Origin: Hydrolagus colliei
Taxonomy: Eukaryota
Length of the DNA: 64,000 bases
Reading direction: 5' to 3'
NCBI GenBank assembly: GCA_035084275.1
Contig: CM068769.1
Coordinates: 248,001-312,000, forward strand
Shown: positions 733 through 62,896 of the stretch, one piece after another
Position numbering within the stretch: the first letter of the stretch is position 1
Layout: every line of letters starts with the position of its first letter
Notes under the pieces: model-generated
Database searches by the model: none
What the model was told of the DNA's origin: nothing
Seen by the model: the letters and a program-made list of their open reading frames with translations, nothing else
Translations under genes and position numbers: made by a program

Positions 733-734
733 TA

Positions 735-2753: not shown

Positions 2754-2792
2754 AGTTTTTGTAGGGCGGCAACGCTAGTCTGTGTTTCTGTG
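2754..2792 (-). other. 23-RSS of V segment B: CACAGAA-23-ACAAAAACT
   Basis: Heptamer 2786-2792, spacer 2763-2785, nonamer 2754-2762. Confidence 0.85.
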
Positions 2793-4842: not shown

Positions 4843-4881
4843 TGTTCTTGTACAGGTCCTTCGTAATCACACAACACTGTG
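4843..4881 (-). other. 23-RSS of V segment C: CACAGTG-23-ACAAGAACA
   Basis: Heptamer 4875-4881, spacer 4852-4874, nonamer 4843-4851. Confidence 0.88.
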
Positions 4882-7712: not shown

Positions 7713-7753
7713 AATTTTTGTAGGGCGGAAGCACCGATCTGTGTATTACTGTG
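7713..7753 (-). other. Aberrant RSS of V segment D: CACAGTA-25-ACAAAAATT
   Basis: Spacer 7722-7746 is 25 nt versus 23 in paralogs B and G. Confidence 0.8.
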
Positions 7754-25960: not shown

Positions 25961-26657
25961 ACCCCTGGGATATATGTACCCATGGTTGAGAACCGTCGAG
26001 CTAGCAGCAAGTAGGAATTGGGTTATTAGTCGATTAGTGGTTGCTTTCCAGTGGAAATACTCTGTTATTAAATAAGTAACTCAATTCACACCTATTTGAG
26101 TGTCACTGCTGCGTAGAATTTAAAGCGTATCTGAGCGCTCTTAGGCACCGTCCGGTGTGGAGCGCGCAATTGAATTAGAAGTTGTTTTTTTGGTGTTGTT
26201 ATCAAGTGACAATGCTTTTTCAATGGACTATCATCCTGGAAAAGGCGATATGCAAATCGACTATTTACTCGGTCCCTATTTACACATCGGGAATAATACT
26301 AAGAATCTATCCATTTGGTATAGCTACTTATCACGTACTCGAGACGTCCAAGTGCGCTTCCCTGTTGATACTGTGCGGTGAGTTTACTGTATGTATTATG
26401 GGATAAAGGCGGCAAATAACTTCACACAATCCACAAAAGGTTGTGGATTGAAGTGATCATTTTAATTAGGAAATATCACACGCTGAAAGACGATCCACCG
26501 TTAGATTAATAACTCGATTCCTACTCTCTCCTAAGTACGCAGAAGCATTTTGTGTTACAAAACAATGGCCGAGTTTCTGGCCTGCTGGGATGCGAACCAG
26601 CAGTCTTATCGTTTCTGAAGCGAGTGCTTTAGCCATTGAGCTACAGTAACTTCAGCA

Positions 26658-26984
26658 TGTTTTTGTACAGGCTCCTCTCCTCTGAGACACGCAGCACTGT
26701 GCTCTCTGCTGCACAGAAGTAAGTGGCGGTGTTTGTCATCCTCAGATCCCTGATTGTTAGTGTGCTGTTCTTCTCTTTTGTATCAGCCAAAGCACTTATC
26801 CTCTCCTCCACCTTGATCTCTCTGCTTCCCTTCAACAGCAAATCGATGGAGCCGTTTCCATACTGTTTGTACCATTGAAAGTAGTCTACGTTCAAAGCGG
26901 TGATGCAATCCATGGTTACATTTCCATTTTAATTCTCTTTAATTGATGGAGGTCTCTGTGACACTCCGCTTTCAGCGAAGACAC
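26658..26984 (-). pseudogene. TCR alpha-like V family 2b (segment H): V exon 26702-26984 with TAA at 26929-26931; RSS CACAGTG-28-ACAAAAACA; leader not identified
   Basis: GVFAESGVSQRPPSIKEN*NGNVTMDCITALNVDYFQWYKQYGNG...ATYFCAAE; spacer carries a GAGGA duplication. Confidence 0.88.
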
Positions 26985-28260: not shown

Positions 28261-28928
28261 GGTTTGTATCGTTAGTTTGATCACACAGTCACAGAATCAT
28301 AGAATCATATAATCTTGCGGCAGAAAAGGAGGCCATTCGGCCCATCGAGACTACGCTGGCTCTTTGAAAAGAGCAATCCAATCCCACTTCTCACCACATT
28401 CTCCATAACTCTTCTAGCTATAACAGTAATACCTTTTAACGAATCCAGGCAGATCAGGGCGAAATCTTGGGCAAGTTTCCTTACTCCGTACGACTAATAT
28501 TAATGCTTCCAAAAATAAGCATAGCAATAAAATTGGTCATTTCAATCCACGCATTTTTGTGGGAGATTGCTGCGGGCAATTAGCTGCCGTATTTCTCACA
28601 CAAATATATATTCAATTCACTTGATTGTATGTTTTGTAAAGCGCTATAAGACTCAATAAGATGTGAAAAGCGCTATATCAAATGCACAGATTATGATTAT
28701 TTTATTATTATTATAACCGCACAAACCTGTCCTCCACAAATAACTGTCTGCCTGACATGTCTCGATCAGTAAACAGATTAGAGACCGTCGCGGGTAATTG
28801 GAAACTGTGAAGAATTCTGACAATGTGTTAGCAAGCTACACATCGGCTCTGGGCGTACTTTCTCTTTTCCGCTAACAGAGAACAAGAGATTTGAATGAGA
28901 AGACTGTGCTGAGGTACACAGTGCATCG

Positions 28929-29711: not shown

Positions 29712-31384
29712 GACCATCGTGTCAATGCCTATCTGCCTGGATTTGGGAACCATTTAAATTGATAGACTAAGAATATCTAAACAAATCTCTGATGATTCTG
29801 TGCAATCCATCTCAATATGGGATTTTCCATCTATTAGAATGGAATGTGCTCTGTCTCTCGCTGGATCTATGCATCCTAACCATCCGATTACAGACGGTAT
29901 AAAATAAACTGACAAGACTTTGTGATGTTTAAATATGGATTACAAACATATAAATAAGCAAGTTTCTTTTGGGAGCACTGTCTCCCAAGGTTTCCCAGCG
30001 CTTCAACCTGGAATGCCCAAACTAAAATCACCCAACTTCGGGGTAGAAATCGCGGCTCTTTTCGGACTTATTTGGCAACAAAATCAGCGTTATGGAATTC
30101 TACAACAACGCAACAGACAATTACACCGGATACATTTGTTCGAATGCAGAGAGGTCAGGGCGAATCCTTGGGCAAGTTTCCTTGCTCGAAACGCATAATA
30201 ATAATCCGTCAAAGAAAAACCACAATTAAAAAAACGGTAATTTCAATCCACGACTGTTTGTGGGACACTGTTGAGCGCAATTGGCTGTCGCGATTCGCCC
30301 ACAGATTTATAGTCAATTCCCTTTACAGGATATTTTGTGACGCACTTGTAGGACGGTGATATGATGTGAAAAACGCTCTATTAACTGCATGAATTATTAT
30401 TATTAGTTAGATTTATTGTGCCTTTGTTGGTGCCGTGAAATATCAGCCAATTATCCCTCAAGATTTCATCAGGTTTCATCAGAATCCGCAAATGACCTGG
30501 TCAAGTAACAGATGTTTCCCTGTACTTTGGATTGTGGTGGTGGTGGAGGATGGGGGGCAGTGTCAATAATGTGTTGGGAGGGCTGTGTAATAGTTGATGC
30601 GCAAGGGAGTGGTATGAAGTGTGTGTACACGGAGGACGTTGTTCGCATTGTCCCTTTGACTCACACGTTCTCACTCCTTTTGCCATGCTGGTTTAGCCAC
30701 AATGGAAATCGCCAATGTTGGACCTTGATTGGAGTTCGTGAAACTTCCACAAAAAATGAACTGAGACAAGTTCCATGCAGCAAAATTTAATCAAAATAAT
30801 TGAACGCCCATACATAATATAGTACATCAAATCAGCGGAATGCTTACGTCAGGTTAGTAAAGTTTATGGCAATAGGTTTGAGCGTGTTAGTATAGTGGCT
30901 TTACAGCAGGAATCGATAGGGCACGGTTCCCATCAACCGATTGTGATTTAACAATACAGCCCAATATATCAACTGTTAACACAGCAACAACCGTGATGAA
31001 CACATTCTTAGTTCTGATCAATGCAATTCAGAGGCAAACGCATGTTCATTTATTCTGAACCCTTCTTCTAAAGTTATACCAACTAAACTGCAACAAACAT
31101 CATGTTAAATGTGGAATTCAGATTATTCGGAAAAAACTAACACGGATCATTCATGTGCAGACTCGGTTGTGATAAGCAACATTCGCCTTGTCAACAAAAC
31201 AATTTCTGAACAGGATTGTCATTCCAAAGGTCAGTTAACTAACATAAGCATTTCTGTCTGAGCGAACATTATATTTTAAGCGAGGGGTGTCGAATCTTTT
31301 GGCTGCTCCCAGTCCGTTTTCGTATTTGGGAAATGTCACATGAGCCAAAATCTTTGTGTTCCCCTTCCAGAAAAAAATAGTTAC

Positions 31385-32224: not shown

Positions 32225-32329
32225 CTACACCCTGACTGCGGCGTACACTGTACCATCGTCAGGAGCGGTTTTGCGGCGATTGTCAATCCGGTTTCCTAAC
32301 GTCAGACTGGCGTAGTTGACATCAGAATC
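32225..32329 (-). CDS. Receptor gene 1, exon 10 (last): ITIM + ITSM
   Basis: Acceptor ttttcgcag|; DSDVNYASLTLGNRIDNRRKTAPDDGTVYAAVRV*; 105 nt, phase 0; conserved in the paralog. Confidence 0.88.
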   Translation of the reverse strand, partial: DSDVNYASLTLGNRIDNRRKTAPDDGTVYAAVRV

Positions 32330-33091
32330 CTGCGAAAAGGACGTCAGTCAACCCACTTGCTTAGGGTTTCAGTGGGAAAACCCAAAGCCCACCCTCACCC
32401 ATGTTGGGATGCCAAGCCATAGCACCTGTATATGTGTGAGCGATTTGTGCCTGTTTGTGTATATGGGCATTTGGGCTTGAACCTCCACCCTTTGAAATTC
32501 CATATCTCTGTCGCTTTGCCTTGCCTCCTACAAGTACATTATGAAGACCCATCTCTACGACCATTCCATCGTCCACCGTGTTACTATGAAGCGCTCTTAG
32601 ACGCCGTCCGACGTGGAGGGCGTTATATCAATCGAAGTTGTTGATACCCCTACTCTTCCTGCATTCTGGGTCTATACACCCAGTAAGTGTCACACACGTA
32701 CACACGCAGACATTTGAGGTCGTGCGAACTGCTGGCAGTGCCGTAAAGTGTTCAACAGATGCTGTTGGAACTTGAGAAACGAACGCAGCAGCCAAATTAT
32801 GCACAGCATCGTCACACAAACACATTCCGTCTCCCCCCAAAACTCTCTTCTGCCTGAGGCAATAGTGCTGCTGGCTGAGTTTGACTGAGCCGGGCTCTGA
32901 GCTGAGCTGTGCCAGCCTGATTGACACAAGGCACATGCTTGGCTCGCGCAAAATTTAATTGATGGTGACATAGGACGTGAATTCTGCTGAGCGAGGAGCC
33001 AACTGAGACTTACAGTAAGGCTGAGCTGAGCTGCATCTAAGCTCACACTGAGCCTGAACCAACGTAAAGCAATGATTCTGTCTCTACTCAC

Positions 33092-33132
33092 CACTGGAGG
33101 CACCAAGCTTGGAACGATTCTCACTGAAGCAT
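33092..33132 (-). CDS. Receptor gene 1, exon 9 (cytoplasmic)
   Basis: tttcag|AT GCT TCA GTG...CCA GTG|GTGAGT; 41 nt, phase 1 to 0; same length in the paralog. Confidence 0.85.
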
Positions 33133-33917
33133 CTGAAACAAAAACAAACAGTGTAGAGTACTAGCATATTACAGTTAAACTCAACGTTATTCAATATCAT
33201 TGTTAATCTTATAAGTAAGTACATTCTGTAATTAAAGACGAAAGTGACAATAATAATCATTTGACAAATAATAGTGTACTTGCAATTTTGGCACTGAATT
33301 TAACTGACTTGTCATTTTGTCGAGACATCCCAAAGAGTTTCATAAGGTACGCCGTTTAATGCAGTTATTGTTCGTATTGTGAGTGACTCATATCATATAG
33401 TTTGGGCACAACAGTGAGCCACAGAAAAGCAAGGTGAATGACATATTTTATTCATTTAGTGGACACCTATAAAAATTCTATTGCCTTTGTGAACAGTGAC
33501 TCCAGATGTCGAATGTGAAACTAAAGAGCCAGACGGGCACTCGCTTTCACATCTCATCTGAAGGGCAGAACACTTGAAGTGGGTGAAATTAATTCAGACG
33601 GTCAGACACACATTGAGACACATGGTCAGATACACAGTTAGACACATGGACAGACACACAATCAGACATGCAAACGGACAAACACACTTGTAGACACTCA
33701 CTCAAACACTCACACACATATACAAACGGATAGTCGCAGATCTTCAGCGAGTGGCAGCACCAGAGAAAGGTTAAGAGAACAATGGCCTCTAGCCAGACAG
33801 AAGATCATGAACAATCGATCGCGTTCTGTGGGATTAAGTTACATGGCTGACTACGCGCCTGTATGTGACCAGTTTTGTTTTCCCTCTGCGATCAAATCAA
33901 GGAAATCTCTCACTCAC

Positions 33918-33961
33918 ATGTGACGTTGCTGGATTCTGGGCCGCCTCTCTCAGGTAAATTC
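33918..33961 (-). CDS. Receptor gene 1, exon 8 (cytoplasmic)
   Basis: cccccag|G AAT TTA CCT...GTC ACA T|GTGAGT; 44 nt, phase 2 to 1; same length in the paralog. Confidence 0.85.
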
Positions 33962-35118
33962 CTGGGGGAAATAAGAACATAGAGTGATGAATTCACTGCT
34001 GCTGTAATAAACAGGACCACAGATCTGAGGCCTGGCCTTTTAATAGAGGTCACAAGCAACTATTTTGTCTAGTCTTGGGGAAATAACAGGGAAATCGTAA
34101 TCAGAGGATTGCTTTTGAAAGAGGAGAACAGGTACGAGGCAACGAATGGTAATAGCTGCTTTATCGCTGTATTTGTTGCTTTAGTTGGAAAATGGAAGAA
34201 GCATGGTGGTGTTCATTGCAAAATCTAATTTCACAACACAGCACTTACCTAACTTCGAGACAGTAAATAAAATATACGAGTTTCTGTTTTTCTGTGTGAT
34301 GGAGCCCGGTGACATGACGGTGTGTTTGCAGTTGGGTGGAGTGGTGAGGAGCTGATCTGTACACAGTGTTTACCTAGACTTGCATGACTTCACTTTTTGA
34401 TTATTTAAGGTGGGGATAGAGGGTAACATGATAACAGGGGTAGACAATTCTTGTCTTATAATGTGTTCCCCTAATTTGATAATTTGATCATTAAATTTGT
34501 GCGGGGTGGTGGGTGAAGTTGGGGACGGGGGTGGTAGAGAGGTTGCGGGGGTTTGCGGGGAGCTGTGTGGTAGGTCCAAGTCAGGTGTGTGCCTCGTGTG
34601 AAAACCCATTACGGTGGTGACATGCTCGAGTCACACGTGCTACAATTGGCAAATTCCTGCGTTTGTTATGATTATACAACAACAAATTAACAAATTACAC
34701 TTATAAAGGATACAGTATCTCTGCAACCCTATGCACCGTTAGAATAAGGCACGGTGTGAGAAGAGGCAGTGTGTATTTGCTCCCAATTGTGCATAGGCAT
34801 AACTGTTTCGGTCTCACCAGCCGAAACCTCACAGCTTTAAGGCAGAAACTATGTCTGGCAAGATTTATAGCGATTAAGAATTACGACAAGACCACCGTTG
34901 AGGGCTTTGTCTTGCAGAAATAACTGAACATCAGTGAAAGGAATCCAGTGTCTCCTTTGTCATCCCACTCTTGGTGAATAGTGACAGAGCGAAAACCAGC
35001 ACGATGAGGTGAGTTGTGCGACGTAAATGGGATAAGAGTTTCGAAGTACAGTGAAGGGGCGAGCAACAATATATGTAAGATGGATAGAGAGCAGAGTTTA
35101 GAGTAGAAGTATTCGTAC

Positions 35119-35146
35119 CTTTCTCCACTTGGACTGTTCTTTTTAG
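35119..35146 (-). CDS. Receptor gene 1, exon 7 (28-nt cytoplasmic micro-exon)
   Basis: CTGAC branch, ttcttgcag|CT AAA AAG AAC AGT CCA AGT GGA GAA AG|GTACG; phase 1 to 2 exactly bridges the TM exon and exon 8. Confidence 0.75.
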
Positions 35147-35713
35147 CTGCAAGAACAAAATGTAATAAAAATGAAACATTGGTCAGTACTTACGTATATT
35201 CGTGTGGTTTTATTAATAGCTATATTCCATTTGAGCCAGGGTCAAAGCCTGAAATGGTGACTATGTATCTTGGGAATGAAATACATCAACTAATTAGCTT
35301 ACTAATGTGTCCCAGAAATTACTATTAATTTAGTGACCAACAAAATGGGTGGAATTGTTAGCCAGGACAACTGGGAGAGAGAAATTCCCATCTCTTTTCG
35401 AATCGAGCCAAAGCATGTTTAACTTCAACATGAACCGTTAGACGGGACCTCGGTTTGTAAGTCTCACCAATGCTATCGACCGAAGGATTGAACATTCAAG
35501 CAACACTGTCATACCACAGCAGCTTCAAAACATTGACTATTCTATATAACTGCAAGTTGTTGTCGTATTGGTGCATCTCTGTTCTCATGCTCTGTTCTCT
35601 GGTGTTTCTCTGAAACACCAGAGCAACCATACAAAGTGATTAACGGCACCGCTGGCTCCAACTTGATTCCGAGCAATTCTATTCTACACTCAGAGATATT
35701 AGTAGACAATTAC

Positions 35714-35812
35714 CTCTCCTATACAGACAGATGGCCAGGAAAATCACAGCGATCACTATCACAGTGACAATTCCAGCAGCAAGTCCTGAAATGCGTATAC
35801 CTATCCACTTTC
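35714..35812 (-). CDS. Receptor gene 1, exon 6 (transmembrane)
   Basis: Polypyrimidine...ctctctag|; GKWIGIRISGLAAGIVTVIVIAVIFLAICLYRR; G|GTAATT; 99 nt, phase 1-1. Confidence 0.9.
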
Positions 35813-36235
35813 CTAGAGAGGAAAAGGGAAAAACAGCAATTGTAAGAGCTAACAAAGACGGAAATTCATGATTTTGCTATGGTTCAATATCAGCTGCTGT
35901 ACAACAGCTCGATCTGGGGTCAGCAAACCTTGTATCACAAAGAAAAATTACATCGTATATTGGTGAGGATTAGGTCGTATACTGAACCCCTCCTTTGCGG
36001 AAAGCAGAGAGAATTAATACCCGGACATACCGTTAGGCTATCGTTCGTGAATTTCGATTTGGAAACTGTTTTATCATGCGATGTTTTTTCGTCCTTAGGG
36101 TTAGGGTTAGGATTGGGGGTTAGAGTTTGGGATCAAACAGGGCAAACACCATGACATTACATAAAAATACCAGGAGCTCTCATAAATTTCTAAAACAGAA
36201 ACAAGTAATTGTTTGAAATTTTATTCAGCACTTAC

Positions 36236-36520
36236 CTGGTACAGTGATTCGCACTCGCTCGCTCTCTGGTGATGTGAATTCTCGTCCGCCTATGTTTGTT
36301 GTATATTGACACGAGTAATTTCCTATTTGGGTCGCCGATTGGTTGAATGTAGCCGTGTTGTTTTTCTCTGGAGCCAGCTGTGATGTGACAAACTCGCCGT
36401 CTCTGTATAAAGAGAAATTGCTGCCAGGATGATTCCCAGCACACGAGATCTCAGTGTGTTCTCCTCTCACTAGCACATGGGAATATGGCTTCAAAGAAAT
36501 GTTTGGCTTCGGAAGTGGAT
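36236..36520 (-). CDS. Receptor gene 1, exon 5 (Ig domain 2, C2-like, LRC/FcR type)
   Basis: DPLPKPNISLKPYSHVLVRGEHTEISCAGNHPGSNFSLYRDGEF...GNYSCQYTT...SPESERVRITVP; 285 nt, phase 1-1. Confidence 0.92.
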
Positions 36521-38163
36521 CTGGAATTGATACACATTAAAGATAATCTCATAAACGGTCGCTGTGATCGGTGGTGGTGTGAGAGTCAACATCAGCACCG
36601 ACAATGAGCCCAGCACCAGCCTGTGAAACTGCTTGTGTCTGAGGTTTAGGTAGAGGCAGACATGTGCACTTTGTCTCAATACCAGGAATCAGCAGCTTTC
36701 CAAAGTGTTCTACTTCAGATTGGGTATCTGCCTGGCTCAACGACTCATACTCTCCTCTCTGAATCAGAGAGTTCTGGGTTCAAAATGCATGTCAGAGACT
36801 TTCAGCCAACAATAAAGGCTGACTCTGCAGTACCGCGCTGGGGGAGAGTAGGATAATAGACTTTGGGGGAGATTTAAAATGAAAATTCTGGCCACATCCT
36901 GTTCAGGCAGATATTAAGCATCCCGCAGCTCTCTTTGAAACAGAATAGTATTTCGACTAGCTGTCGTGATCAACAATGCTTCAGACAAAATGGGAACTTT
37001 GGAAAGTCAGGTCCAGGCGAATGATTTTACGGCCCTTTTTGTCAGCTTTATATCTCTCCACAGTAACTCCCCCACACGTCGTTTGTGACCTCCAGTAAAC
37101 CCGCATCTCCGCCCCCACTCCCCCCCTCCCTCAGCACAACTGCCTTCACTCAGACCTGGTCCACATCGCGCCATCGTCCACTACAGCACTAAATTCTCCT
37201 CCCCACCCTTCCGACTCCATTATACCCAGTCCGGCTTCTAGCCACTTAGCCACTTTAGAAGTCCAACAGGTAGACCCTCTGACTACATACTTTTCTCCAC
37301 TCTTTCAAGGCCTGACTCAACGTCTACCTTTTCGCCACACTTTGGAAATAGTTTGACTGCCTTCCACAGCAATTCAACCCAGCTCCCCGGCTCCAGCCTG
37401 ACACAATGTCCAGCCGCAATGCCCAGCTAGGTCACAAGGCCTGGAGTGTTTCACACTTTGGGATATCCATGAGGGGAAAGGAAAATTTGGGATTTGATAG
37501 TAATTTACTGCGTCACCGCTGGTAGTACGTTGCCTTGAATCGCAGGTGAAATATGTTGTTATTGTGTGAAATTGATGTCATAGTTGCCAAGAAATAATAG
37601 TCCCCTCTATTGAAGCGTTTTTCTTACATACAGTATTATCGCTATTTGGATCACTAAGGTTATGCGAAAATTTGTTTCAAGTAATTCCACGTTGATGGAA
37701 GAAAATGACCCATTTCGCATCATTTGCGGCAATAAATATACGGTCTGATTACTGGGTGGGTGGTAACGTTGGCAATGATTGTTTGCCACACACTTCTCTG
37801 TTTGTCCAGCATTAGTTAACAACATGTTTGGTAGTTGAACGGTAAATTCTTTTCCTGGAGGTTAACAATCCCTCCAAAATAGTAGCAGTATGGTCACCAG
37901 CTCCACCCTGTTGAGTGCGATGAGCAACTAGCTGCCGCATTCCACTCACAAATATATATTCAATACACGTTGAGATTTGAAATAATTTCAGTCGTCTCTT
38001 CAAAGTGCTATGAACTGCAAGCATTATCCTTGCACCACCACCAACAACAAAATTATGTACACGTGTATAGCGCCTTTCACGTCAAATTCAAACTCATCAA
38101 AACATAATTAGGTGAGTGAATGAGAATTTAGAAGTTGGAAAGCCTTCAGGCTCTCGCTCTTAC

Positions 38164-38448
38164 CCAGCAGGGAGACTTCCACTCGCTTGCTCTCTGGTGA
38201 TGCGTGGTCTCGGCTCTCTACGTGTGTAGTATATTTACACCAGTAGCTCCCTGTACTGATCTCTGATGCGATGAACGTGGCCTTGGTTTCATTCTCTGGA
38301 GATGGCTGTGATGTAATAAATTGATCGTTTCTATAGAAAGAAAAATTGCTGCCAAGGTGATTCCCAGAACACGAGATCTCAGCTATTTCTCCCCGCACAA
38401 ACACCGGGAAATCCGGCTTCAGGTGTATAGTGGGTTTCTGCAGTGAAC
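38164..38448 (-). CDS. Receptor gene 1, exon 4 (Ig domain 1, C2-like, LRC/FcR type)
   Basis: GSLQKPTIHLKPDFPVFVRGEIAEISCSGNHLGSNFSFYRNDQF...GSYWCKYTT...SPESKRVEVSLL; 285 nt, phase 1-1. Confidence 0.92.
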
Positions 38449-39229
38449 CTGGAATTAAAGCAACAAAAATAATATCACGACTACTCGCTCTGATCTGTGC
38501 TGTGAAACTGAAAATCATGATCTTCAACGACCGTCTGTTTGATTGTTTCTGCCTAAGGTTTATTAAGAGGTAGAATTGTGCACTGTATTTAAACCTCGGT
38601 CAGTGTGAGTTGTGGTCAGGATCAGCTCGGGGGTGAGAGTGAGCTGGGGCACAGTGTGATTTGCCGACCTGTGTGAGCAGGAAGCTGGTGTAAACTGGTT
38701 TACAGTGTGAGCTGGAGGGCTGTGTGACCCGGAAGAGATTCCCTGCTGGGGATCATTGTGTCCTGCGGATATGTGACTGTTCTGGGTTGCGGTCACATCC
38801 CCACCGTTAACTGGCTCAGAGTCAGACACTGCACTTGTTAAGCACTCTTAGATGCTACACGGCTTGGAGGGCGCTATTTAATTCTATGTTGTCGCTGTTG
38901 TTCATCGGCCCAAGCATTGTACTGAGCCTCTCCCGAACCGCTCAGCCTCGCACACAGTCACCCCCATCATCTCATCGCTTTCATCCTGCATTGAAACCCA
39001 TCCAATTGTCTCCTCTCTTCCCACGTTGGTCTTCTCCATCCCTCCCTCAGTCCTAATCCCTCCCCATGTAATCTGCCAACCACGAGACCTCAGCCCCTCC
39101 CCCATTTCTCACGACCTCCTACTGTGATCAGCGTTGGCATGGTGGTCTGCCTCACCACTGTATACACTATTCTCAGCCCGTTCCTCTGTGATCACGCACG
39201 CCTCATCGATATAGTCACTCTGTGTACGA

Positions 39230-39660
39230 CAACAACAGCTTCGATTTATATAGCGCTATCACGCCGGACGGCGTCTCAGAGCGCTTCAGAATAGCGGATC
39301 CCGGGACCGAGTCTGGGGCAGGGGCAGAAAGGTGACCAAAAGCGCGCTGGAAGAGAAAGGTCTTCAGCTGTGACCTGAAACTCGGAAGAGAGGGGGCGAG
39401 GCGAAGGGAGTGTGGAAGGAAGTTCCAGACCCTCCCGGTGTAGCGACTGAAGGCAGGTCGCCGAGGGTGCGGCGGAGGATTCGGAGAACATGGATGAGGC
39501 CAGACCCAGAGGAGCGCAGGCAGCGGGTGCTGGGTGGGGGGAGAAGAGATCATAGAGATAGGCGAGTGAAGGGATTTGAAAACAAGGGTGATGATCTTGA
39601 AGTCGATCCTCTGTGGGATAGTGAGGCAGTGAAGTCTGGCATGGACTGGAATAATGGGGG
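39230..39660 (-). mobile_element. L2 3'-end fragment or L2-derived SINE in a receptor intron (similar pieces near 6690-7160, 21900-22300, 27470-27880, 43490-43880, 50700-51130, 54250-54540)
   Basis: Shared tail gagacgccgtccggcgtg...gcgctatataaatcgaagct; boundaries approximate. Confidence 0.7.
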
Positions 39661-39852
39661 AGCGAAGTTGAAGGTTGGAGTGTACTCACTCGCCCTTTTG
39701 GTCCCGTCTCTGTTCAAACCCCTGCAGTCATAACACTCTGTGTTCACAATGCATAATGTATGCACTGTGCGCCCCATCCAGTGCTCATCACCCTCCGTGC
39801 CTCCACCCCACCCCGAGTGAACGAGACAATGATCAGACACTGAGTTACTTAC

Positions 39853-40161
39853 CTGAGCAGATGACGGCGGCATCATTGTCGTGTGTTGCGGGATAGTGAC
39901 TCCAGGGATGTGAGGGACATTCCCTCAGAGTAGACTCATTGCCTCTGCACTGAACATCAAAAGTCACAATGGGAGCTATTGCTTTCCCAAAGTGAGCTCC
40001 TCCTGGTATTGACATTGCCTCTCCACAGCCCAGCTCCTTACACACCACTGCTACGTCCTTCATATCCCAGTCAGAGTCAAACACTCTCCCCCATATTCCA
40101 TCGTGGTAAACCTCCACTCTCCCAGCACACGTGATGCTTCCATTCGCCAGTCTCACTCTCC
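39853..40161 (-). CDS. Receptor gene 1, exon 3 (single-exon SRCR domain)
   Basis: GRVRLANGSITCAGRVEVYHDGIWGRVFDSDWDMKDVAVVCKELGCG...DVQCRGNESTLRECP...DAAVICS; 309 nt, phase 1-1, G|GTAAGT. Confidence 0.95.
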
Positions 40162-41972
40162 CTGTAACACATCATACAAATATCATAATAGTCTTTCCTC
40201 GTTGTCATAAACTCAACCAAGATTCAACAGATGCGTATTGTCTATTGTCCACAACAGATAGACATTTGTTTTGGGAGGACGGATTTATGCGGTTATGGGG
40301 AGAGAACTGGAGAATGGGATTGAATTGATCGTTTCAAAGAGCTGGCACAGCCTCTATGGGAAGAATGGCCTCCTTTTGTGCCGAAAGATACTATGATTCC
40401 ATAATTCTAATAAAGTGTACATGTGCCTGAAACACGGGAGGGTGTCTGCGGTATTAACTATACAGCAATGATAATAATAACTATAATGGTGGCAGTGAAT
40501 GATGGAGACATACAATGCAAATTATGAGTGTCCCAATGACAGATACAGTTTATTCCATGGCGAGCTACGCCCGTTTCAGCTACGTTTGCAACAAAATGAT
40601 ATATCATGGAATAAATATTTCAGTGTTTGTATACTTTATGTTATGTTAGGATACTTTATTTTGTAATACTTTATAATATTTTATGATACTTTACGTATCA
40701 TAGTATTTTATAGTCGGTTAGTCAGCTTCATAATTGATTGTTATATTTTATATTGTGTCTTTTATATATTATCATAAATTATAGTTCCTTATCATAATGC
40801 ATATTATGTTAGATTATTGTACTTTATAATATTATGCTTTATGTTACATGTAAGGCCAAAACAAACGTAGAATTTGTCACATGAATTCAGGACTCTTTGT
40901 GTCATACAGACTGATGCGCGCCATTGGCTGCAACACTTTACCCGAAAATAATGCAGGCAATAAACTTTAAAGCATACTGTGTGAAGCGCTTAGAAATATC
41001 TAGCAGACACAGAAGCACTAAATCAAATTGATGGAATAATATATGTTAGTACATTTTACGAAATTGTACTAAATATGATATGATTACACTTGATAATAAA
41101 TTTTATCCTTTTTGTTAAATTATTATGTTGTTATTAGATTACTATATGTTAGACAACGATAGGATATGCCGTACAAATATACACCAGTGCTTTTGTAATT
41201 TGCTACACAAAATATTAGTTAGATGTATCGCTCTACAAAGGTATATGTTTGTTTTTAAAAAACATTACGTTGCAGAATAGCATATTTTGCAGATTAATGT
41301 AATATTATAAAATATAGCTGATCAAACACATGAGATCCCAGAAGCCAAATATGACCTTAACATTTTTTTTAGGAAGACGTTTCCGCTATGGTGTATATTA
41401 AACTCTTAAGTCAGGTATTCCGTTATTGGCAAATCCACAGATACACACACAATGCCAATTTATTAGTTTAATTTTATCAGGTAACAGCTCGGGTTTGTTC
41501 GTTAAGGGCAAGTTACATGGTGTATGTGCAAACACAGAGAGATAGATATTGAACAGTGCAACCTGACAGAGTTCACAATCCCACAGCACAGCGATTTGAG
41601 AGCTAATCTCTACTGGGGGCAGCGCTGTGCCTACACCATACATAGGACACCAGTCAAACTCGACACTCTCCACCATCCTCCCATGTACAACTCAACAAAC
41701 ACCTTCTTTGAACCCAGACGTATGTATAGTAGCCACGGCTATTAGAAAAACGTCAACTTGCGTTGAAGCAGGCAGCTAAGGATTACAAGATGGAGGGAAA
41801 GAGAAAGAGTATTCCATAGGTTTGAAACGTTGTGACTGAAAGCGCAGCCGCCGATGAGAGAATAACTGGGCAAGAGGGACACAATGTGAAACTTTACTAA
41901 CATGGTTTGTTCATTATGTGACTGTTTGATTCCCCACTCCCCATATATCGATAAAGAGAGGCCGAGACTCAC

Positions 41973-42029
41973 CCTCATGAGCTAAAGTTGCAGCAGTGGC
42001 TTTCATCATCATCATCTCTAGAGATATCA
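41973..42029 (-). CDS. Receptor gene 1, exon 2 (second half of the signal peptide)
   Basis: ttccccttgtgcag|TG ATA TCT CTA GAG ATG ATG ATG ATG AAA GCC ACT GCT GCA ACT TTA GCT CAT GAG G|GTGAGT; 57 nt, phase 1-1. Confidence 0.78.
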
Positions 42030-42644
42030 CTGCACAAGGGGAAAAACAAATACATCAGGTGGAAGTATGAATCCGATAAGGATATTAAAGCATTGGAAAT
42101 GGTGCGGAAGAGATTTTCCACGATGGTATCAGCAATCAGGAACTTCAGTTATGTCTACTCAGCTATTCAGCTTTCAACTCCGCCCCTCAATCATCTATTG
42201 CTTTACTCTCACGCTCGATTCCCAATCTTCTTTCTTTCCTTAACAACAAGCCAAAATTATAGTTAGCAGTGCATTCCACAGCAACAGGACGTCCTGTGGT
42301 GGACGGCGGGAGATTTGCACCAGAGCTGGTGGTTGATTTCAGGACAGGTGGAAAGCAGAGAACGTAGGGCTAATAGGTTGGCAGAAGGCAGGGTTGAAGA
42401 AGAGCGTCTTGAGATGTCTCCTCATGGAGGCAAGCGAGGGTGCGAGATTCAGCGACTGTGGGATGGAGTGCTAGATGGTGGGCGCAGAGAAGCTGAAAGC
42501 CATCTCTTCTATAGTGGGGCGGTCAAAGTGGAGTTGCAGACAGGCAGAGTGGGCTACCGCAGCGATGTGAGGGTGAACGACAGTTGGAGGTCAAACATGA
42601 TGCTGAGAGATTGAATCAGTGATTGGGTTATTAACAGTACTCAC

Positions 42645-42693
42645 AGAATAGGAGAAGCATCTTGAGGATGGAGATGGACCTGTAAAGGGGCAT
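42645..42693 (-). CDS. Receptor gene 1, exon 1 coding part (ATG at 42660, or in-frame upstream ATG at 42693)
   Basis: (MPLYRSISILK)MLLLF+T|GTGAGT; joined to exon 2 gives MLLLFLISLEMMMMKATAA, a plausible signal peptide. Confidence 0.68.
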
Positions 42694-48000: not shown

Positions 48001-49873
48001 AAAATGCGTTGCAATCTTCACTCACAGCATACACAGTCACTTCAATGTACTGTATATTTTGTGACGCGACTTGTCCTTTTGTTGAGAAAGGCTATCTGCC
48101 AAAAGCAAGAATTATTATCCTCTTGGTTTCGGAGGAGATATAGGTTATAATATATAATAATCCTTGCTGTTGATATAACGCTTTCCACATCTTATCAACG
48201 TCCCAAAGCGCTCATAGAATATGCTGTAAAGTGAATTGACTATATATTTGTGGGCAAACCGCGGCAACCAATTGCGCACAGCAGTGTCACACACAGTCGT
48301 GGATTGAAATGACCAATTTTATTATTCTGTCTTTTTTTGGAGGGATGATTATTAGGCGTGTGGAGTAAGGAAACTTGCCCAAGGTTTCGCCCTGACCTGC
48401 CTGGATTCGAACACAGGTCTCCCCAGCTTGGTCTCCCCAGCTTGCAAGACAAGTGCTCTAACCACTGAGCCACAGGAAATCACAAGGTTGAGCCTACAAG
48501 GCCTGTTGCTGCCCTAAACAATGCCGCCCCTACTACTCTAAATAAGGCTCAGCTCTCATCCTCTGTCACACACTGGTCTCTCGCATTCTCCATCTCACAC
48601 ACTTTCTATCTCTCCTTGTCAGTACTTCTCTCACACGCTCCGACTTCCTCTCTCTCCCTACGCCATCTGTTTCTCTCACATTCTCAGTATCTGTCTCTCA
48701 CAAAATGCATCTGATACTCTCAGTCTATCGCTCTCTCACAGGCTCTGTCTATCACACAGGATGTACAGGTATCATCCTTGTGTTTGCACATAACGCAGTG
48801 CCTCTGCATAATGTCTATCATTTGCTTAACAGAACGATAAACGGTACAGTATGGTAAAAATAACATAATAATCATTGTATTAGATATAGCGCTTTTCACA
48901 TCGATACACAGAATATATTGTCAAGTGAATTTACTGTATATTTGTGGGCGAATCTCGACAGCCAATTGCGCACAGCAGCGTCCCACAAACAGTCGTGGAT
49001 TGAAATGACCAATTTTATTATTGTGATATTTTGGGAGGGATTATTATTAGGCGAGTGGAGTAAGGAAACTTGCTCAAGGTTTCGCCCTGACCTGCTTGGA
49101 TACGAACATAGGTCGCCCTAACTTGGTCTCCCAGCTTGCAAGTCACGTCCTCTAACTAATAAGCCACATGAGCTCCGAAAAGGCGGTGGAGGCCGATTCG
49201 ATAACAACTTTTAAAAGAGAGGTAGACATTTATTTGGGGAGGATGGGTTTACACATTTATCGGAAGAGAGCTGGGGAGTGGGATTGAATTGCTCCTGTCA
49301 AAAACCATGCATAGAACAAATGGCCTCCTTTTGTGCTATATTGTTCTGTAATGCTATGATTGTTAGCCTTTATCCCATCTAACTTTCTCTTCTAGCCAAT
49401 TTATTTGGGCTTGTTGAAATCTCGCATAATATTATAGTACCAAGTAAACACATTTCCTCAATTTGCTCTAGATGTTTCTCAGAGTTTGCAGTTTGTACCA
49501 GATGAATTCAAATCCCACACGAAAGTGATATTATTGAACATGTTGTCAAATTTCAGCGGATGATGTGTCGTTGAACCACCGTCAACATGTTATCTTAGCA
49601 GCGTTATCACAAAGCAAGCAGCAAACGCACAAATCTTCGCCACCTCCTTCAACGTCTCGCTTATTTGATGGATTGACACACAGAGAAGAGCTAGAAATAA
49701 ACAAACCGTGGAGCTAAAATTCGCCAAAGATGAATTATCTGAAACATTTGAGTTGTGCCTACTGATGTATGTGGTTTCCATACAGAAATGTTTCCCGCAA
49801 GTTGGCATCAGACCACTTACTGAAGCTTCACGTGCAGCCAACGGCAAACAAAACATTCTTGTTTGTCTTTTAT

Positions 49874-61180: not shown

Positions 61181-61285
61181 CTACACTCTGACCGTGGCGT
61201 AGACTATACCAGGGTCCACGTTGGTGTTTCGGGCATTCTCACTCCTGTTTCCTAACACCAGATTGGCGTAGGTGATATCAGCGTC
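61181..61285 (-). CDS. Receptor gene 2 (paralog), last exon: two ITIMs
   Basis: tgtttgcag|DADITYANLVLGNRSENARNTNVDPGIVYATVRV*; 105 nt. Confidence 0.87.
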   Translation of the reverse strand, partial: DADITYANLVLGNRSENARNTNVDPGIVYATVRV

Positions 61286-62078
61286 CTGCAAACAGTTTAA
61301 CAATTATCACACCTGCCGACGGACAGTGGGAACCCCCCACCACTTACACCCTTCCAGCACCCCACCCCCACCAATGGGAGGCTCCAAACCATAGCTCATG
61401 TGTGTGTTTTTGTGTGTGTGTTTGTTTGAGTGAGTATATCTCTCATTCGTTCCTTCACTCATTGAGTCTCCCAGTGTTTGTGTGTGCGCGCGTTCGGCTT
61501 GTAACATCGAACATTTGGATCCCCATTCTCCAGTCCCCGTTTGGTTGCTCGCTTATCTGCGACTCTCAAGTACGTGTTCAAGACATTACTCTTCTTCGAC
61601 CAACTTCCTGCCCGTAATCTATCTGCCTTCTGTATCCCCAAACCACAGCACAGGTCTAAATCAATGACTGACTAGCGTTTTGGGATGTACATACATAGAT
61701 GCAAACATTTACAGACAGACACAAAGAAACACACGTGAACACAAAGGCATACACATATACACACATACACACATACACAGACATGTATGTACATATAAAC
61801 ACAAGTACACAGCGCTAAACACACCATACGTACTAACAGCTACACACACAGAGACAAAGTGGTGACTAACGCTGTGCGGAGTCAGTCTGACAAATACCTG
61901 GACTGGGTTTTATTCAAGCTTACAGAGGCTCGACTGACACAGAAACGGATCTGGGCTAAGCCTGGCTGACATAGGACGTGAGCTATACTGACAAGGCCTG
62001 AGCTGGACTGAACCAGGCTAAAACAATGTTTTAGCCTGACCTGAACCAGGCTAAAACAATGATCCTGACACCGCTCAC

Positions 62079-62119
62079 CTCTGGAGTCTCTGATCGTGGA
62101 GCTCGTCTCACTGTAGCAT
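62079..62119 (-). CDS. Receptor gene 2, penultimate exon
   Basis: tttcag|AT GCT ACA GTG AGA CGA...CCA GAG|GTGAGC; 41 nt. Confidence 0.83.
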
Positions 62120-62852
62120 CTGAAACAAACACAAAGGTGAATTAACATCAGCAATGTTTCAGTAAAATTCTCCGGTATTCATCAATAATATTATGATATC
62201 AATACATACAACTTAGTATTATTGAAGAAAATAACAAGAATAATTATGAGACAAAGAGTGGTAGAATATTAATTCTTGTATTTAGAATAAATCCTGAACA
62301 TGTCGACAAACGATCCCAATGTGCTTCAGAATAGACGCGGTACAGTGGAGAGACTGTGTACCCTCCCTATGGAAATGGCGCTCCAGAAAGATTTTGTTGA
62401 TTCCATTGTTGCTACGTTTTATAAGAGTGGACCATAAACATCCATTTTGCGCACACTGGTGTCCCATAGACACATAGTTAGACCACGTACAGACACACAG
62501 GCAGACACAAATACACACCCACAGCTAGACAAAGGGAGACGGTGAATGAGACAGAAAGAGATAGAAAAATAGTATAAGTAATCATCCTTGAATTTGATGT
62601 AGCACTTTCCATATATTCTAGAATTGTCAAAGAGCTTGACAGAATATACTGTAAATTTTGTGGGGGACACGCGGCACCCAAATGCGCACAACAGTGTACC
62701 TCAAAAAGTCGTAGATTGAAATGAACTCGCAGTTGGAGGAGTTTGATGAGCAAGCGATGGATGTGTGTGGTGCTCAGTCATATTGCTGAATAGGTCTGTC
62801 TGTGACTGGCTCCTTTCATTCTAGGTTCAAACCCAGGAAACCTCTCACTCAC

Positions 62853-62896
62853 ATGTAAAGTCGCTGGCTTGTGCGCCGCCTCCCTCAGGTATGTTC
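62853..62896 (-). CDS. Receptor gene 2, cytoplasmic exon; upstream exons presumably lie beyond the window
   Basis: ctttttcag|G AAC ATA CCT GAG GGA GGC...TTT ACA T|GTGAGT; 44 nt. Confidence 0.83.

What the first reader, a model, noticed from the sequence alone, without database searches (positions are those of the whole stretch)
32225..42693. Complete SRCR-Ig-Ig-TM inhibitory receptor gene with a triple ITIM/ITSM tail
Seen: ten exons (16+57+309+285+285+99+28+44+41+105 = 1269 nt) with canonical GT-AG sites and matching phases splice into one stop-free 422-aa frame. The order is signal peptide, one SRCR, two short C2-like Ig domains, a TM with no charged residue in its core, and a tail AKKNSPSGERNLPERGGPESSNVTYASVRIVPSLVPPVDSDVNYASLTLGNRIDNRRKTAPDDGTVYAAVRV. 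Established: V/I/L/SxYxxL/V is an ITIM and TxYxxV/I an ITSM, both SHP-1/SHP-2 docking motifs as in LILR, Siglec and PD-1. Group B SRCRs occur in CD5, CD6, CD163 and the gamma-delta co-receptor WC1, which lack Ig domains. Inference: a hybrid of a scavenger-type pattern-recognition head with an LRC-type inhibitory receptor, in a chondrichthyan. I know of no characterised receptor with this architecture, although unnamed fish SRCR+Ig predictions may exist.
Basis: partly seen in the sequence, partly recalled or inferred. Interest (0 to 1): 0.93.

Follow-up and report, generated by a model that had tools for sequence, protein, structure and literature searches.

The report
Hybrid SRCR–Ig inhibitory immune receptor gene
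An intact ten-exon gene in a chimaera-like cartilaginous fish encodes a surface receptor with a scavenger-receptor (SRCR) head, two LILR/KIR-type Ig domains and an inhibitory ITIM/ITSM tail; it is real, but it belongs to an unstudied family already predicted in the elephant shark, and SRCR+Ig mosaics are common in fish proteomes.

Summary
On the minus strand, ten exons (16+57+309+285+285+99+28+44+41+105 nt) with GT-AG at every junction splice into a stop-free 422-aa protein. The order is leader, one SRCR, two Ig domains, an uncharged TM core, and a tail with two ITIMs (VTYASV, VNYASL) and one ITSM (TVYAAV).

One correction: the 16-nt first exon starts at the ATG at 42660. The ATG at 42693 is an in-frame upstream start.

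The Ig domains are LRC-type; the best PDB matches are PIR-B, LILRB1/2, NKp46, OSCAR and KIR. The SRCR keeps the group-B C1-C4 pair but lacks C2-C7.

The gene is not unique. Callorhinchus milii carries a multigene family (50-65% identity) with the same architecture and the same three-tyrosine tail, plus a short-tailed member with Arg in its TM. SRCR+Ig+TM mosaics are also predicted in rays, sharks, sturgeon, bowfin and teleosts. All are unnamed or misnamed, and I found no paper on them.

The only characterised Ig+SRCR chimera I found is soluble mammalian FCRLS, which has the opposite domain order.

The most likely function is an ITIM-type inhibitory receptor that recruits SHP-1/2. The ligand is unknown.

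The gene and a tandem paralog lie directly 5' of TCR-alpha/delta-like V segments.

The parts
42645..42660 (-). Coding exon 1 (16 nt, MLLLF + 1 nt, phase 1). It holds the start of the leader peptide.
   Evidence: ATGCTTCTCCTATTCT|gtgagt. It is homologous in position and phase to the 28-nt first leader exon of the C. milii paralog in L001.
42661..42693 (-). Possible 5' extension: an in-frame upstream ATG at 42693 (MPLYRSISILK).
   Evidence: There is no stop between 42693 and 42660 and the frame is the same. Which ATG is used depends on the transcription start, which was not determined.
41973..42029 (-). Coding exon 2 (57 nt, phase 1-1). It holds the rest of the leader, (L)ISLEMMMMKATAATLAHE(G).
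   Evidence: The junctions are cag|TGATATCTCTAGAG...CATGAGG|gtgagt. It begins like the 36-nt second leader exon of the C. milii paralog (TGATATTTCTGGAGG...). The extra 21 nt include (ATG)4.
39853..40161 (-). SRCR exon (309 nt, phase 1-1).
   Evidence: Pfam SRCR E=4.9e-28 over residues 31-127. The best PDB match is CD163 SRCR7. The 6-Cys pattern lacking C2 and C7 is shared with the C. milii family.
38164..38448 (-). Ig domain 1 exon (285 nt, phase 1-1).
   Evidence: Pfam Ig_2 and Ig_C19orf38. Cys154 and Cys198 are present. It is 61% identical to C. milii P0005. The family profile hits LRC receptors first.
36236..36520 (-). Ig domain 2 exon (285 nt, phase 1-1).
   Evidence: Pfam Ig_2 over residues 227-299. 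Cys249 and Cys293 are present. The exon plus flanking intron is 73-77% identical in DNA to C. milii loci.
35714..35812 (-). Stalk and transmembrane exon (99 nt).
   Evidence: The 24-residue core ISGLAAGIVTVIVIAVIFLAICLY has no charged residue. The GLAAGIVT motif is conserved in C. milii long-tail members.
35119..35146 (-). Cytoplasmic exon 1 (28 nt, AKKNSPSGE(R)).
   Evidence: Canonical AG/GT. It is colinear with P0007.
33918..33961 (-). Cytoplasmic exon 2 (44 nt, NLPERGGPESSNVT plus the first base of Tyr375).
   Evidence: Canonical AG/GT. If the next intron is retained, the frame reads ...SNVTCE-stop. That is the C-terminus annotated for C. milii isoforms P0006 and P0028.
33092..33132 (-). 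Cytoplasmic exon 3 (41 nt). It completes Tyr375, giving ITIM 1, VTYASV.
32225..32329 (-). Last coding exon (105 nt including TAG). It holds ITIM 2 (VNYASL, Y394) and the ITSM (TVYAAV, Y417).
   Evidence: AATAAA/ATTAAA signals lie at 31442 and 31054 downstream.
61181..62896 (-). Tail exons of an upstream tandem paralog: 62896-62853 (44 nt), 62119-62079 (41 nt) and 61285-61181 (105 nt). They splice to RNIPEGGGAQASDFTYATVRRAPRSETPEDADITYANLVLGNRSENARNTNVDPGIVYATVRV*.
   Evidence: The exon sizes and phases are identical to the main gene, with 59% identity in the last exon. The rest of this gene lies beyond the window end.

Best explanation
This is an intact gene for a type I membrane receptor of a holocephalan multigene family. 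The family is built by exon shuffling from one SRCR exon, LRC-type (LILR/KIR/PIR-like) Ig exons, a TM exon and a four-exon inhibitory tail cassette.

Shown here: the exon structure, the domain identities, an uncharged TM core, two ITIMs and one ITSM, and conservation of the whole tail cassette in C. milii paralogs.

Inferred: the ectodomain binds a ligand that is still unknown, through the SRCR head, the membrane-distal Ig domain, or both. Src-family kinases then phosphorylate Y375, Y394 and Y417. The tyrosines are 19 and 23 residues apart, so pairs of them could dock the tandem SH2 domains of SHP-1/SHP-2, and the ITSM might also bind SAP-type adaptors. This would damp ITAM-driven activation of the leukocyte carrying the receptor.

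The family appears to be a paired one. A C. milii member has the same kind of ectodomain but a short tail and an Arg inside the TM, which suggests an activating, adaptor-coupled partner. Retention of the intron after the 44-nt exon would give an ITIM-less ...SNVTCE* isoform.
For: - Gene model: ten exons, all GT-AG, 422-aa ORF.
- Domains: SRCR E=4.9e-28 and two Ig domains. The SRCR is closest to CD163 SRCR7.
- Ig type: a family Ig profile hits PIR-B at 1.6e-17, then LILRB2, LILRB1, NKp46, OSCAR and KIR3DL1. FcεRIα and FCRL4 appear only around 3e-4.
- Tail: VTYASV, VNYASL and TVYAAV. The motifs resemble LILRB, LAIR and KIR ITIMs; this is from my own knowledge.
- Tail conservation: the TM and tail align gap-free to C. 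milii P0007 (55% identity, E=2e-37) and P0031 (46%, E=8e-27). The first two ITIMs are conserved in P0003, P0007, P0031 and P0075; P0068 keeps only the second, IHYASL. In the neighbouring paralog the second motif (ITYANL) is a canonical ITIM but the first is FTYATV, with F at -2.
- Putative activating partner: P0057 and P0109 have TM ...VARLIVVITLPLVIIF... and a 19-residue tail.
- Both partners of one SRCR disulfide are lost together, and all other structural cysteines are kept. This argues for a folded, selected domain rather than decay.
Against: - There is no transcript or protein evidence for this gene in this species.
- The start codon is ambiguous (42693 or 42660). The h-region of the leader is short and the cleavage site was not predicted with a dedicated tool.
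- No ligand is known.
- The third motif is not conserved as an ITSM in relatives: PVYATV or PIYATV in most C. milii members, IVYATV in the neighbour.
- YxxV/L motifs are also generic AP-2 sorting signals.
- Phosphorylation and SHP binding are inferred from motif consensus only.
- The Arg-in-TM 'activating partner' is inferred from one C. milii gene.
Confidence: 0.7

Rival explanations
1. The protein is mainly an endocytic scavenger receptor. The SRCR head captures microbial or altered-self ligands, and the three YxxΦ motifs (YASV, YASL, YAAV) act as AP-2 sorting signals for uptake rather than as phosphatase docking sites.
For: All three motifs fit YxxΦ. SRCR receptors such as CD163 are endocytic (established knowledge). 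The SRCR is closest to CD163 SRCR7.
Against: The -2 positions (V, V, T) fit ITIM/ITSM. They stay aliphatic in the first two motifs in most C. milii relatives examined, and the neighbour's second motif is ITYANL; YxxΦ alone does not require this. The tail cassette is shared with Ig-only family members that have no SRCR, such as P0075. The family includes a short-tail member with a charged TM, which is typical of paired signalling receptors. The two roles are not mutually exclusive.
Confidence: 0.12
2. The model is not a functional single gene. Either it joins exons of two adjacent genes (an SRCR gene and an Ig receptor gene), or it is an unexpressed recent duplicate in a fast-turnover cluster.
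For: There is no expression data. The region is rich in LINE and SINE fragments, and the family is tandemly duplicated. The leader exon 2 carries an unusual (ATG)4 insertion.
Against: No leader, TM or stop-containing exon lies between the SRCR and Ig1 exons. All exons from the second leader exon through the TM exon are phase 1-1. Several independently annotated C. milii genes have the same SRCR-to-Ig junction (...VICS|G.. / ..CS|DPLQKP) and the same tail. There are no frameshifts or stops in 1269 nt, all structural cysteines are paired, and all 18 splice sites are canonical.
Confidence: 0.08
3. The output is switchable or dual rather than purely inhibitory. The C-terminal ITSM could recruit SAP/EAT-2-type adaptors and give activating signals, as in SLAM-family receptors. 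The intron-retention isoform (...SNVTCE*) would yield a signalling-dead decoy that competes for ligand.
For: TVYAAV fits TxYxxV. The read-through stop directly after the 44-nt exon is conserved in this gene, in the neighbour (SDFTCE*), and in annotated C. milii isoforms P0006 and P0028.
Against: The T at -2 is not conserved; it is P in most C. milii members and I in the neighbour. Two canonical ITIMs sit upstream of it. Whether chimaeras have SAP-family adaptors was not examined here.
Confidence: 0.1

Closest known systems
Callorhinchus milii predicted proteins LOC103172721 (P0007, 450 aa), LOC103191288 (P0003, 723 aa), XP_007883112 (P0031) and P0068. They are annotated as 'uncharacterized', 'M130-like', 'DMBT1-like' or 'A1BG-like'.
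   Same: The parts and their order are the same: split leader, SRCR, LRC-type Ig, TM (GLAAGIVT...), and a tail with ...SNVTYA[ST]V...D.[IV].YA[NS]L...[VI]YA[AT]VRV* (P0068 lacks the first motif). P0003 also shares the 6-Cys SRCR subtype; P0031 has the classical 8-Cys form, and P0007 and P0068 were not captured in the alignment. P0007 and P0031 also align gap-free across the TM and tail.
   Different: Identity is only 50-65%, so there is no 1:1 orthologue. Domain numbers differ: 1-2 SRCR and 1-4 Ig there, against S-I-I here. The third motif is an ITSM here but PVYATV or PIYATV there. The second leader exon is 57 nt here and 36 nt in the one C. milii paralog examined. None of these proteins has been studied experimentally as far as I could find.
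Mammalian and avian LRC inhibitory receptors (LILRB1-5, PIR-B, KIR-L, LAIR-1, CHIR-B)
   Same: The Ig domain type is shared, with one phase-1 exon per Ig domain, a split leader, an uncharged TM, a long tail with tandem ITIMs of the VTYAxV/L kind, and short-tailed relatives with a charged TM.
   Different: None of them has an SRCR domain. LRC synteny was not shown here; the gene sits next to TCR V segments. The Ig domains are distant (E about 1e-10 to 1e-17 with a family profile).
FCRLS (Fc receptor-like scavenger; mouse, rat, dog and other mammals), PMC7940838
   Same: It is the only characterised vertebrate protein I found that combines Ig-like domains with a group-B-type SRCR domain. It too is thought to have arisen by recombination between an Ig-receptor gene and an SRCR gene.
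   Different: In FCRLS the Ig domains are N-terminal and the SRCR is C-terminal. It has no TM and no ITIM and is soluble. Its Ig domains are FCRL-type and its second leader exon is 21 bp. It is an independent invention.
CD163 / WC1 / SCART1 / CD5 / CD6 (group B SRCR membrane receptors)
   Same: The SRCR domain is closest to CD163 SRCR7. Each SRCR is encoded by a single exon, the protein is a type I membrane protein, and the tail has tyrosine motifs.
   Different: Those receptors carry tandem arrays of SRCR domains and no Ig domains. Their SRCR domains have 8 cysteines. Their tails are unrelated.
SRCR/Ig mosaic predictions in other fishes: Narcine bancroftii XP_069783103, Pristis pectinata XP_051864821, Heptranchias perlo XP_067833434, Amia XP_066566105, Acipenser and Polyodon (P0030, P0036, P0115), Cyprinus XP_042588924, and others
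   Same: They combine SRCR domains with the same kind of Ig domain, and many have a TM. Architectures range from S-I-I to more than 20 domains. The sturgeon protein P0115 is S-I-I-TM by the first search's coverage, and S-I by my Ig HMM. It has a VSYASL ITIM.
   Different: Identity is about 30-35%. The sturgeon SRCR domains aligned (P0030, P0115) have the classical 8 or more cysteines; the elasmobranch and teleost ones were not checked. Apart from P0115, none of the representatives examined has a canonical ITIM or ITSM in its tail. Many are giant multi-domain proteins.

Membership tests
SRCR superfamily, group B | The sequence matches the SRCR domain model. | tested here: met
   Pfam PF00530 E=4.9e-28, residues 31-127, covering profile positions 2-100 of 100. 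PDB matches are CD163, CD5L, CD6 and DMBT1.
SRCR superfamily, group B | The domain is encoded by a single exon. | tested here: met
   One 309-nt, phase 1-1 exon at 40161-39853.
SRCR superfamily, group B | Eight cysteines are present, including the group-B-specific C1-C4 pair. | tested here: not met
   C1 and C4 are present, but C2 (WGTVC becomes WGRVF) and C7 are both absent, leaving 6 Cys. The same pattern occurs in the C. milii family SRCRs. Sturgeon relatives and C. milii P0031 keep 8 or more. The domain is best described as a group-B-derived 6-Cys subtype.
LRC-type Ig-like receptors (LILR/PIR/KIR/OSCAR/NCR1) | The Ig domains are more similar to LRC members than to FcR/FCRL or other Ig families. 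| tested here: met
   A profile of 22 family Ig domains gives PIR-B 1.6e-17, LILRB2 3.4e-11, LILRB1, NKp46, OSCAR and KIR. The first non-LRC hit is FcεRIα at 3.4e-4. The single-sequence search agrees.
LRC-type Ig-like receptors (LILR/PIR/KIR/OSCAR/NCR1) | Each Ig domain lies on one phase-1 exon, and the leader is split with a 36-bp second exon. The 36-bp rule is from my own knowledge; I could not confirm it in the paper library. | tested here: inconclusive
   The Ig exons are 285 nt each, phase 1-1. The second leader exon is 57 nt here but exactly 36 nt in the C. milii paralog in L001 and starts with the same bases. It is not the 21-bp FcR/FCRL type described in PMC7940838 and PMC2413239.
LRC-type Ig-like receptors (LILR/PIR/KIR/OSCAR/NCR1) | The gene lies in a region syntenic with the leukocyte receptor complex. 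| not testable with these tools
   The window shows only a tandem paralog, LINE and SINE fragments, and TCR-alpha/delta-like V segments. No LRC framework genes were seen and no chromosome-scale context is available.
ITIM/ITSM inhibitory receptors | The cytoplasmic tail carries the consensus (S/I/V/L)xYxx(I/V/L) and/or TxYxx(V/I). | tested here: met
   VTYASV (Y375), VNYASL (Y394) and TVYAAV (Y417). The first two are conserved in C. milii P0003, P0007, P0031 and P0075. P0068 keeps only the second. The neighbour has ITYANL but FTYATV for the first.
ITIM/ITSM inhibitory receptors | Type I topology with an uncharged TM. | tested here: met
   There is an N-terminal hydrophobic leader, a 24-residue uncharged core, and a basic stop-transfer sequence YRRAKK. 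This was judged by hydropathy only; no SignalP or TMHMM was available.
ITIM/ITSM inhibitory receptors | Tyrosine phosphorylation, SHP-1/SHP-2 (or SHIP) recruitment, and inhibition of ITAM signalling. | not testable with these tools
   This needs biochemistry and cell assays.
FCRLS (Ig + SRCR-B chimera) | FCRL-type Ig domains N-terminal to a C-terminal SRCR, no TM, and a 21-bp second leader exon. | tested here: not met
   The order here is SRCR then Ig. The Ig domains are LRC-type. A TM and a long tail are present. The leader exon is 57 nt (PMC7940838).
CD163/WC1/SCART family | Tandem arrays of group-B SRCR domains as the whole ectodomain. | tested here: not met
   There is a single SRCR followed by two Ig domains. 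No further SRCR exon exists in the window.

The most novel reading that the evidence does not exclude
SRCR-plus-LRC-type-Ig receptors may be an ancient gnathostome receptor class that was lost or dissolved in tetrapods. Holocephalans would then have evolved from it a paired ITIM/activating family with a new 6-Cys SRCR subtype. The position of at least two members directly 5' of, and co-oriented with, a TCR alpha/delta-like V-segment cluster would reflect functional coupling to T cells: an inhibitory, Ig-bearing counterpart of the SRCR co-receptor WC1. It would also move the origin of LRC-type ITIM receptors back before the split between cartilaginous and bony fish, contrary to the 2014 claim that they first appear in bony fish (PMC4016189).
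Probability: 0.12. Interest if true: 0.75.

Novelty: new variant of a known kind. Interest (0 to 1): 0.45.

Why it matters
- It gives a clean, intact example of an LRC-type, ITIM-bearing Ig receptor in a cartilaginous fish. One comparative survey reported that this receptor class is absent from sharks and arises only in bony fish (PMC4016189).
- It shows that exon shuffling has joined a pattern-recognition-type SRCR head to an inhibitory signalling chassis, repeatedly and in many fish lineages. The literature I could search describes only the soluble mammalian FCRLS chimera.
- The family is easy to test. It offers short ectodomains for Fc-fusion ligand screens, a compact tail for SHP-binding assays, and apparent inhibitory and activating pairs.
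- Its value is limited because the family is already visible in public annotations, and the inhibitory function is predicted from motifs only.

Tried and rejected
1. A first exon counted from the ATG at 42693 was rejected as a 16-nt exon because it has no GT donor. A 14-nt version with a GT donor runs into a stop in exon 2. The 42693 ATG is kept only as a possible in-frame upstream start.
2. A word-indexed search with the TM and tail alone (residues 318-422) found nothing at E<=0.01 against 5.8 billion proteins. The tail relationship was shown by pairwise BLASTP instead.
3. The spliced protein is not accepted by the representative search, and by the same stated input rule it would not be accepted by the structure tool. 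I therefore searched with the C. milii Ig-only family member P0075 and ran no AlphaFold model. Single-exon models would have added nothing beyond the Pfam and PDB matches.
4. The look-up of encoding contigs had no record for P0006 or P0007. P0057, P0068 and P0074 gave C. milii loci L001-L003.
5. I asked whether C. milii family loci also sit next to TCR V segments. No V exon lies within ±10 kb of three loci, so the linkage seen in the window is not shown to be general.
6. An ITAM reading of the tail was rejected. The tyrosine spacings are 19 and 23 residues and the first motif ends in V, so the tail does not fit YxxL/I-x6-12-YxxL/I.
7. I could not find literature support for the '36-bp second leader exon' LRC rule in the library. 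It stays a recollection.
8. Six literature searches for any described chondrichthyan or fish SRCR+Ig receptor returned nothing relevant; one on TCR-locus context also found nothing.
9. I did not try to name the species. Shared repeat families with C. milii at 70-83% identity and the identity gradient point to a holocephalan. No protein identical to this one is in the searched collection.

Full report
**Observation**

The gene lies on the minus strand. I rebuilt it from the sequence.
- exon 2: 42029-41973 (57 nt)
- SRCR: 40161-39853 (309 nt)
- Ig1: 38448-38164 (285 nt)
- Ig2: 36520-36236 (285 nt)
- TM: 35812-35714 (99 nt)
- tail: 35146-35119 (28 nt), 33961-33918 (44 nt), 33132-33092 (41 nt), 32329-32225 (105 nt with TAG)

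A 14-nt version with a GT donor runs into a stop. A proper 16-nt exon, ATGCTTCTCCTATTCT|gtgagt, sits at 42660-42645 and gives the reported total of 1269 nt and 422 aa. The ATG at 42693 is in the same frame 33 nt upstream with no intervening stop. The protein may therefore start MPLYRSISILK-MLLLF... (433 aa) or MLLLF... (422 aa), depending on the transcription start.

**Is it more than chance?**

Pfam gives SRCR at E=4.9e-28 over the full model, and Ig_2 (1.7e-13) and Ig_C19orf38/HIDE1 (5.5e-13), each matching two stretches. The small exons, which carry no domain signal of their own, are validated by colinearity. The spliced TM and tail (five exons) align without a single gap over 103 residues to the C-terminus of C. 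milii P0007 (55% identity, E=2e-37) and of P0031 (46%, E=8e-27). All three end at ...VRV-stop.

The leader exons are also homologous to those of a C. milii paralog. Its second leader exon begins TGATATTTCTGGAGG, against TGATATCTCTAGAGA here, and both pairs of exons are phase 1.

**Anatomy**

- Leader: MLLLFLISLEMMMMKATAATLAHEG.
- SRCR: residues about 27-127.
- Ig1: about 128-222 (Cys154-Cys198).
- Ig2: about 223-318 (Cys249-Cys293).
- There are nine N-glycosylation sequons in the ectodomain.
- TM core: ISGLAAGIVTVIVIAVIFLAICLY, uncharged, with an Arg just outside it and the stop-transfer sequence YRRAKK.
- Tail: about 71 residues past the stop-transfer Arg-Arg, with VTYASV (Y375), VNYASL (Y394) and TVYAAV (Y417). 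By the strict consensus this is two ITIMs and one ITSM.
- The tyrosines are 19 and 23 residues apart. There is no ITAM.

The SRCR is closest to CD163 SRCR7 among solved structures. It keeps the group-B-specific C1-C4 pair, C3-C8 and C5-C6, but lacks both partners of C2-C7. This 6-Cys subtype is shared with the C. milii family SRCRs. Sturgeon relatives and C. milii P0031 keep the classical 8 or more.

The Ig domains are LRC-type. A profile of 22 family Ig domains hits PIR-B (1.6e-17), LILRB2, LILRB1, NKp46, OSCAR, LILRA5/6 and KIR before any Fc receptor; FcεRIα is at 3.4e-4 and FCRL4 at 6e-4.

**Relatives**

All close relatives are from the elephant shark Callorhinchus milii, at 50-65% identity. 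They form a modular family:
- P0003: 2 SRCR + 4 Ig.
- P0007: 2 SRCR + 2 Ig.
- P0031 and P0068: SRCR + 1 Ig.
- Ig-only members: P0001, P0019, P0042, P0075.

Many share the TM motif GLAAGIVT. Most long-tailed members share the tail cassette ...SNVTYA[ST]V...D.[IV].YA[NS]L...[VI]YA[AT]VRV; P0068 lacks the first motif, and P0066 and P0087 have divergent tails.

P0057 and P0109 have the SRCR-Ig ectodomain, a different TM with an embedded Arg (VARLIVVITLPL...), and a 19-residue tail. This is the classic signature of an activating partner in paired receptor families; the activating role is inference.

NCBI names these proteins 'DMBT1-like', 'M130-like', 'IGSF1-like', 'A1BG-like', 'OSCAR' or 'uncharacterized'.

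An exhaustive HMMER search with the Ig-only member P0075 found 598 cluster representatives at E<=1e-3. Of the 138 new ones listed, 34 also carry SRCR domains and 21 of those have a TM. Their architectures run from S-I-I-I to interleaved S/I arrays of more than 20 domains. They come from:
- rays: Narcine, Pristis
- a shark: Heptranchias
- bowfin
- teleosts: Sardina, Clupea, Cyprinus, Epinephelus, Collichthys, Sphaeramia
- sturgeon, paddlefish and conger, from the first search

Outside holocephalans only the sturgeon protein P0115 showed a canonical ITIM (VSYASL). None of the other SRCR+Ig representatives did.

**Source organism**

Elasmobranch Ig relatives of the C. milii family are only about 31-35% identical to the C. 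milii query, whereas the window's protein is 57-65% identical to C. milii. The window also shares interspersed repeat families with C. milii scaffolds at 70-83% DNA identity, and exon-plus-intron similarity around the Ig and SRCR exons is 73-77%. The source is therefore a holocephalan. No identical protein exists in the searched collection, so it is either another chimaera species or an unannotated C. milii paralog.

**Literature**

I found no paper describing a chondrichthyan or fish SRCR+Ig receptor family.

The one characterised Ig/SRCR-B chimera is mammalian FCRLS. It is described as unique, soluble, with Ig domains first and the SRCR last, and with the 21-bp second leader exon of the FcR/FCRL family (PMC7940838; PMC2413239).

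A 2014 survey stated that no LRC-type C2-only receptors exist in sharks and that they arise in bony fish (PMC4016189). The holocephalan family, including Ig-only ITIM members such as P0075, is at odds with that statement.

**Mechanism**

The best-supported reading is an ITIM-type inhibitory receptor. After ligand engagement, Src-family kinases phosphorylate the tail tyrosines, and SHP-1/SHP-2 bind through their SH2 domains and damp ITAM signalling. The ITSM may add SHP-2 or SAP-type binding.

- Shown: the motifs, their conservation in paralogs, the topology, and the family's apparent paired organisation.
- Inferred: phosphorylation, phosphatase recruitment, cell type and ligand.

Rivals:
- The tyrosines act as YxxΦ endocytosis signals on a scavenger receptor. 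This is not exclusive of the main reading.
- The gene copy is mis-joined or silent.
- The output is switchable or acts as a decoy.

**Details seen along the way**

The codon for Tyr375 is split across the junction of the 44-nt and 41-nt exons. If that intron is retained, the frame reads ...SNVT-C-E-stop. The same SNVTCE C-terminus is annotated for C. milii isoforms P0006 and P0028. The neighbouring paralog would read SDFTCE-stop. An ITIM-less isoform therefore seems to be a conserved option.

**Context**

About 18.5 kb upstream on the same strand lie the three tail exons of a tandem paralog: 62896-62853, 62119-62079 and 61285-61181. Their sizes are the same 44, 41 and 105 nt, and the spliced tail is ...SDFTYATV...DITYANL...GIVYATVRV*.

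Downstream on the same strand, at 26928-3, are seven germline V-set exons in three subfamilies. Six end in YxCA (the seventh ORF breaks off earlier), and at least four are followed by a recognisable heptamer, 23-type spacer and nonamer. One subfamily matches TCR alpha V domains best in the PDB.

The receptor genes therefore abut a TCR alpha/delta-like V cluster. Three C. milii family loci show no V exons within ±10 kb, so this linkage is not shown to be general.

**Verdict**

It is wrong to imply a singular hybrid. This is one member of an unstudied but already-annotated holocephalan family, within a wide radiation of fish SRCR/Ig mosaics.

Relative to characterised receptor families, it is a new variant: an LRC-type ITIM receptor with an SRCR head. 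I rate interest at 0.45.

Noticed in passing
window 3-329, 2713-3117, 4815-5186, 7705-8067, 19288-19719, 22881-23177, 26644-26928 (all minus strand): Seven germline V-set exons in three subfamilies. Six end in YxCA, and at least four are followed by CACAGTG-type heptamers, a spacer of about 23 nt and ACAAAAAC-type nonamers. One subfamily matches TCR alpha V domains best in the PDB. The SRCR-Ig gene therefore lies directly 5' of, and co-oriented with, a TCR alpha/delta-like V cluster.
   Followed up: partly
window 61181-62896 (minus strand): Tail exons (44, 41 and 105 nt) of a second, tandem family member. Its tail reads ...SDFTYATV...DITYANL...GIVYATVRV*. Its ectodomain exons lie beyond the window end.
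   Followed up: partly
window 33918 donor (minus strand); also 62853 in the neighbour: Tyr375 of the first ITIM is split across a splice junction. Intron retention would give ...SNVTCE-stop. The same C-terminus is annotated in C. milii isoforms P0006 and P0028, so an ITIM-less isoform looks conserved.
   Followed up: partly
window 41973-42029 (minus strand): The second leader exon is 57 nt and contains (ATG)4, coding MMMM. The homologous exon of a C. milii paralog (L001 about 21583-21618) is 36 nt. The 21-nt difference looks like an in-frame insertion or microsatellite expansion in the signal peptide.
   Followed up: no
window 23406-24353 (-), 52974-54209 (+), 57755-58885 (+), 802-1605 (+): LINE-type reverse-transcriptase fragments; three of the four ORFs match Pfam RVT_1, and 802-1605 gave no Pfam hit. 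The copies at 52849-54128 and 57313-58936 are 75-77% identical to an element in the C. milii locus L001.
   Followed up: partly
window 405-741, 20175-20443, 28444-28714, 30157-30419, 48147-48477, 48855-49114: A short interspersed repeat of about 270-340 bp is present in many copies. It is shared with C. milii scaffolds at 75-84% identity and is probably a SINE.
   Followed up: no
window about 15990-16780 (+): A C-rich stretch (GC 0.53, GC skew -0.35) whose reading frames repeat peptides such as HSHCPAHTVTAPPTQSLP. It looks like a tandem minisatellite.
   Followed up: no
C. milii loci L002/L003 (GCA_018977255.1 MU249876.1 and MU249954.1): Dense tandem arrays of family SRCR and Ig exons, with up to about ten Ig/SRCR exon hits in about 20 kb, on unplaced scaffolds. 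One annotated model (P0050) fuses SRCR-Ig-Ig to a B30.2/SPRY domain and is named 'TRIM17-like'. This is either a mis-joined model or a further mosaic.
   Followed up: no
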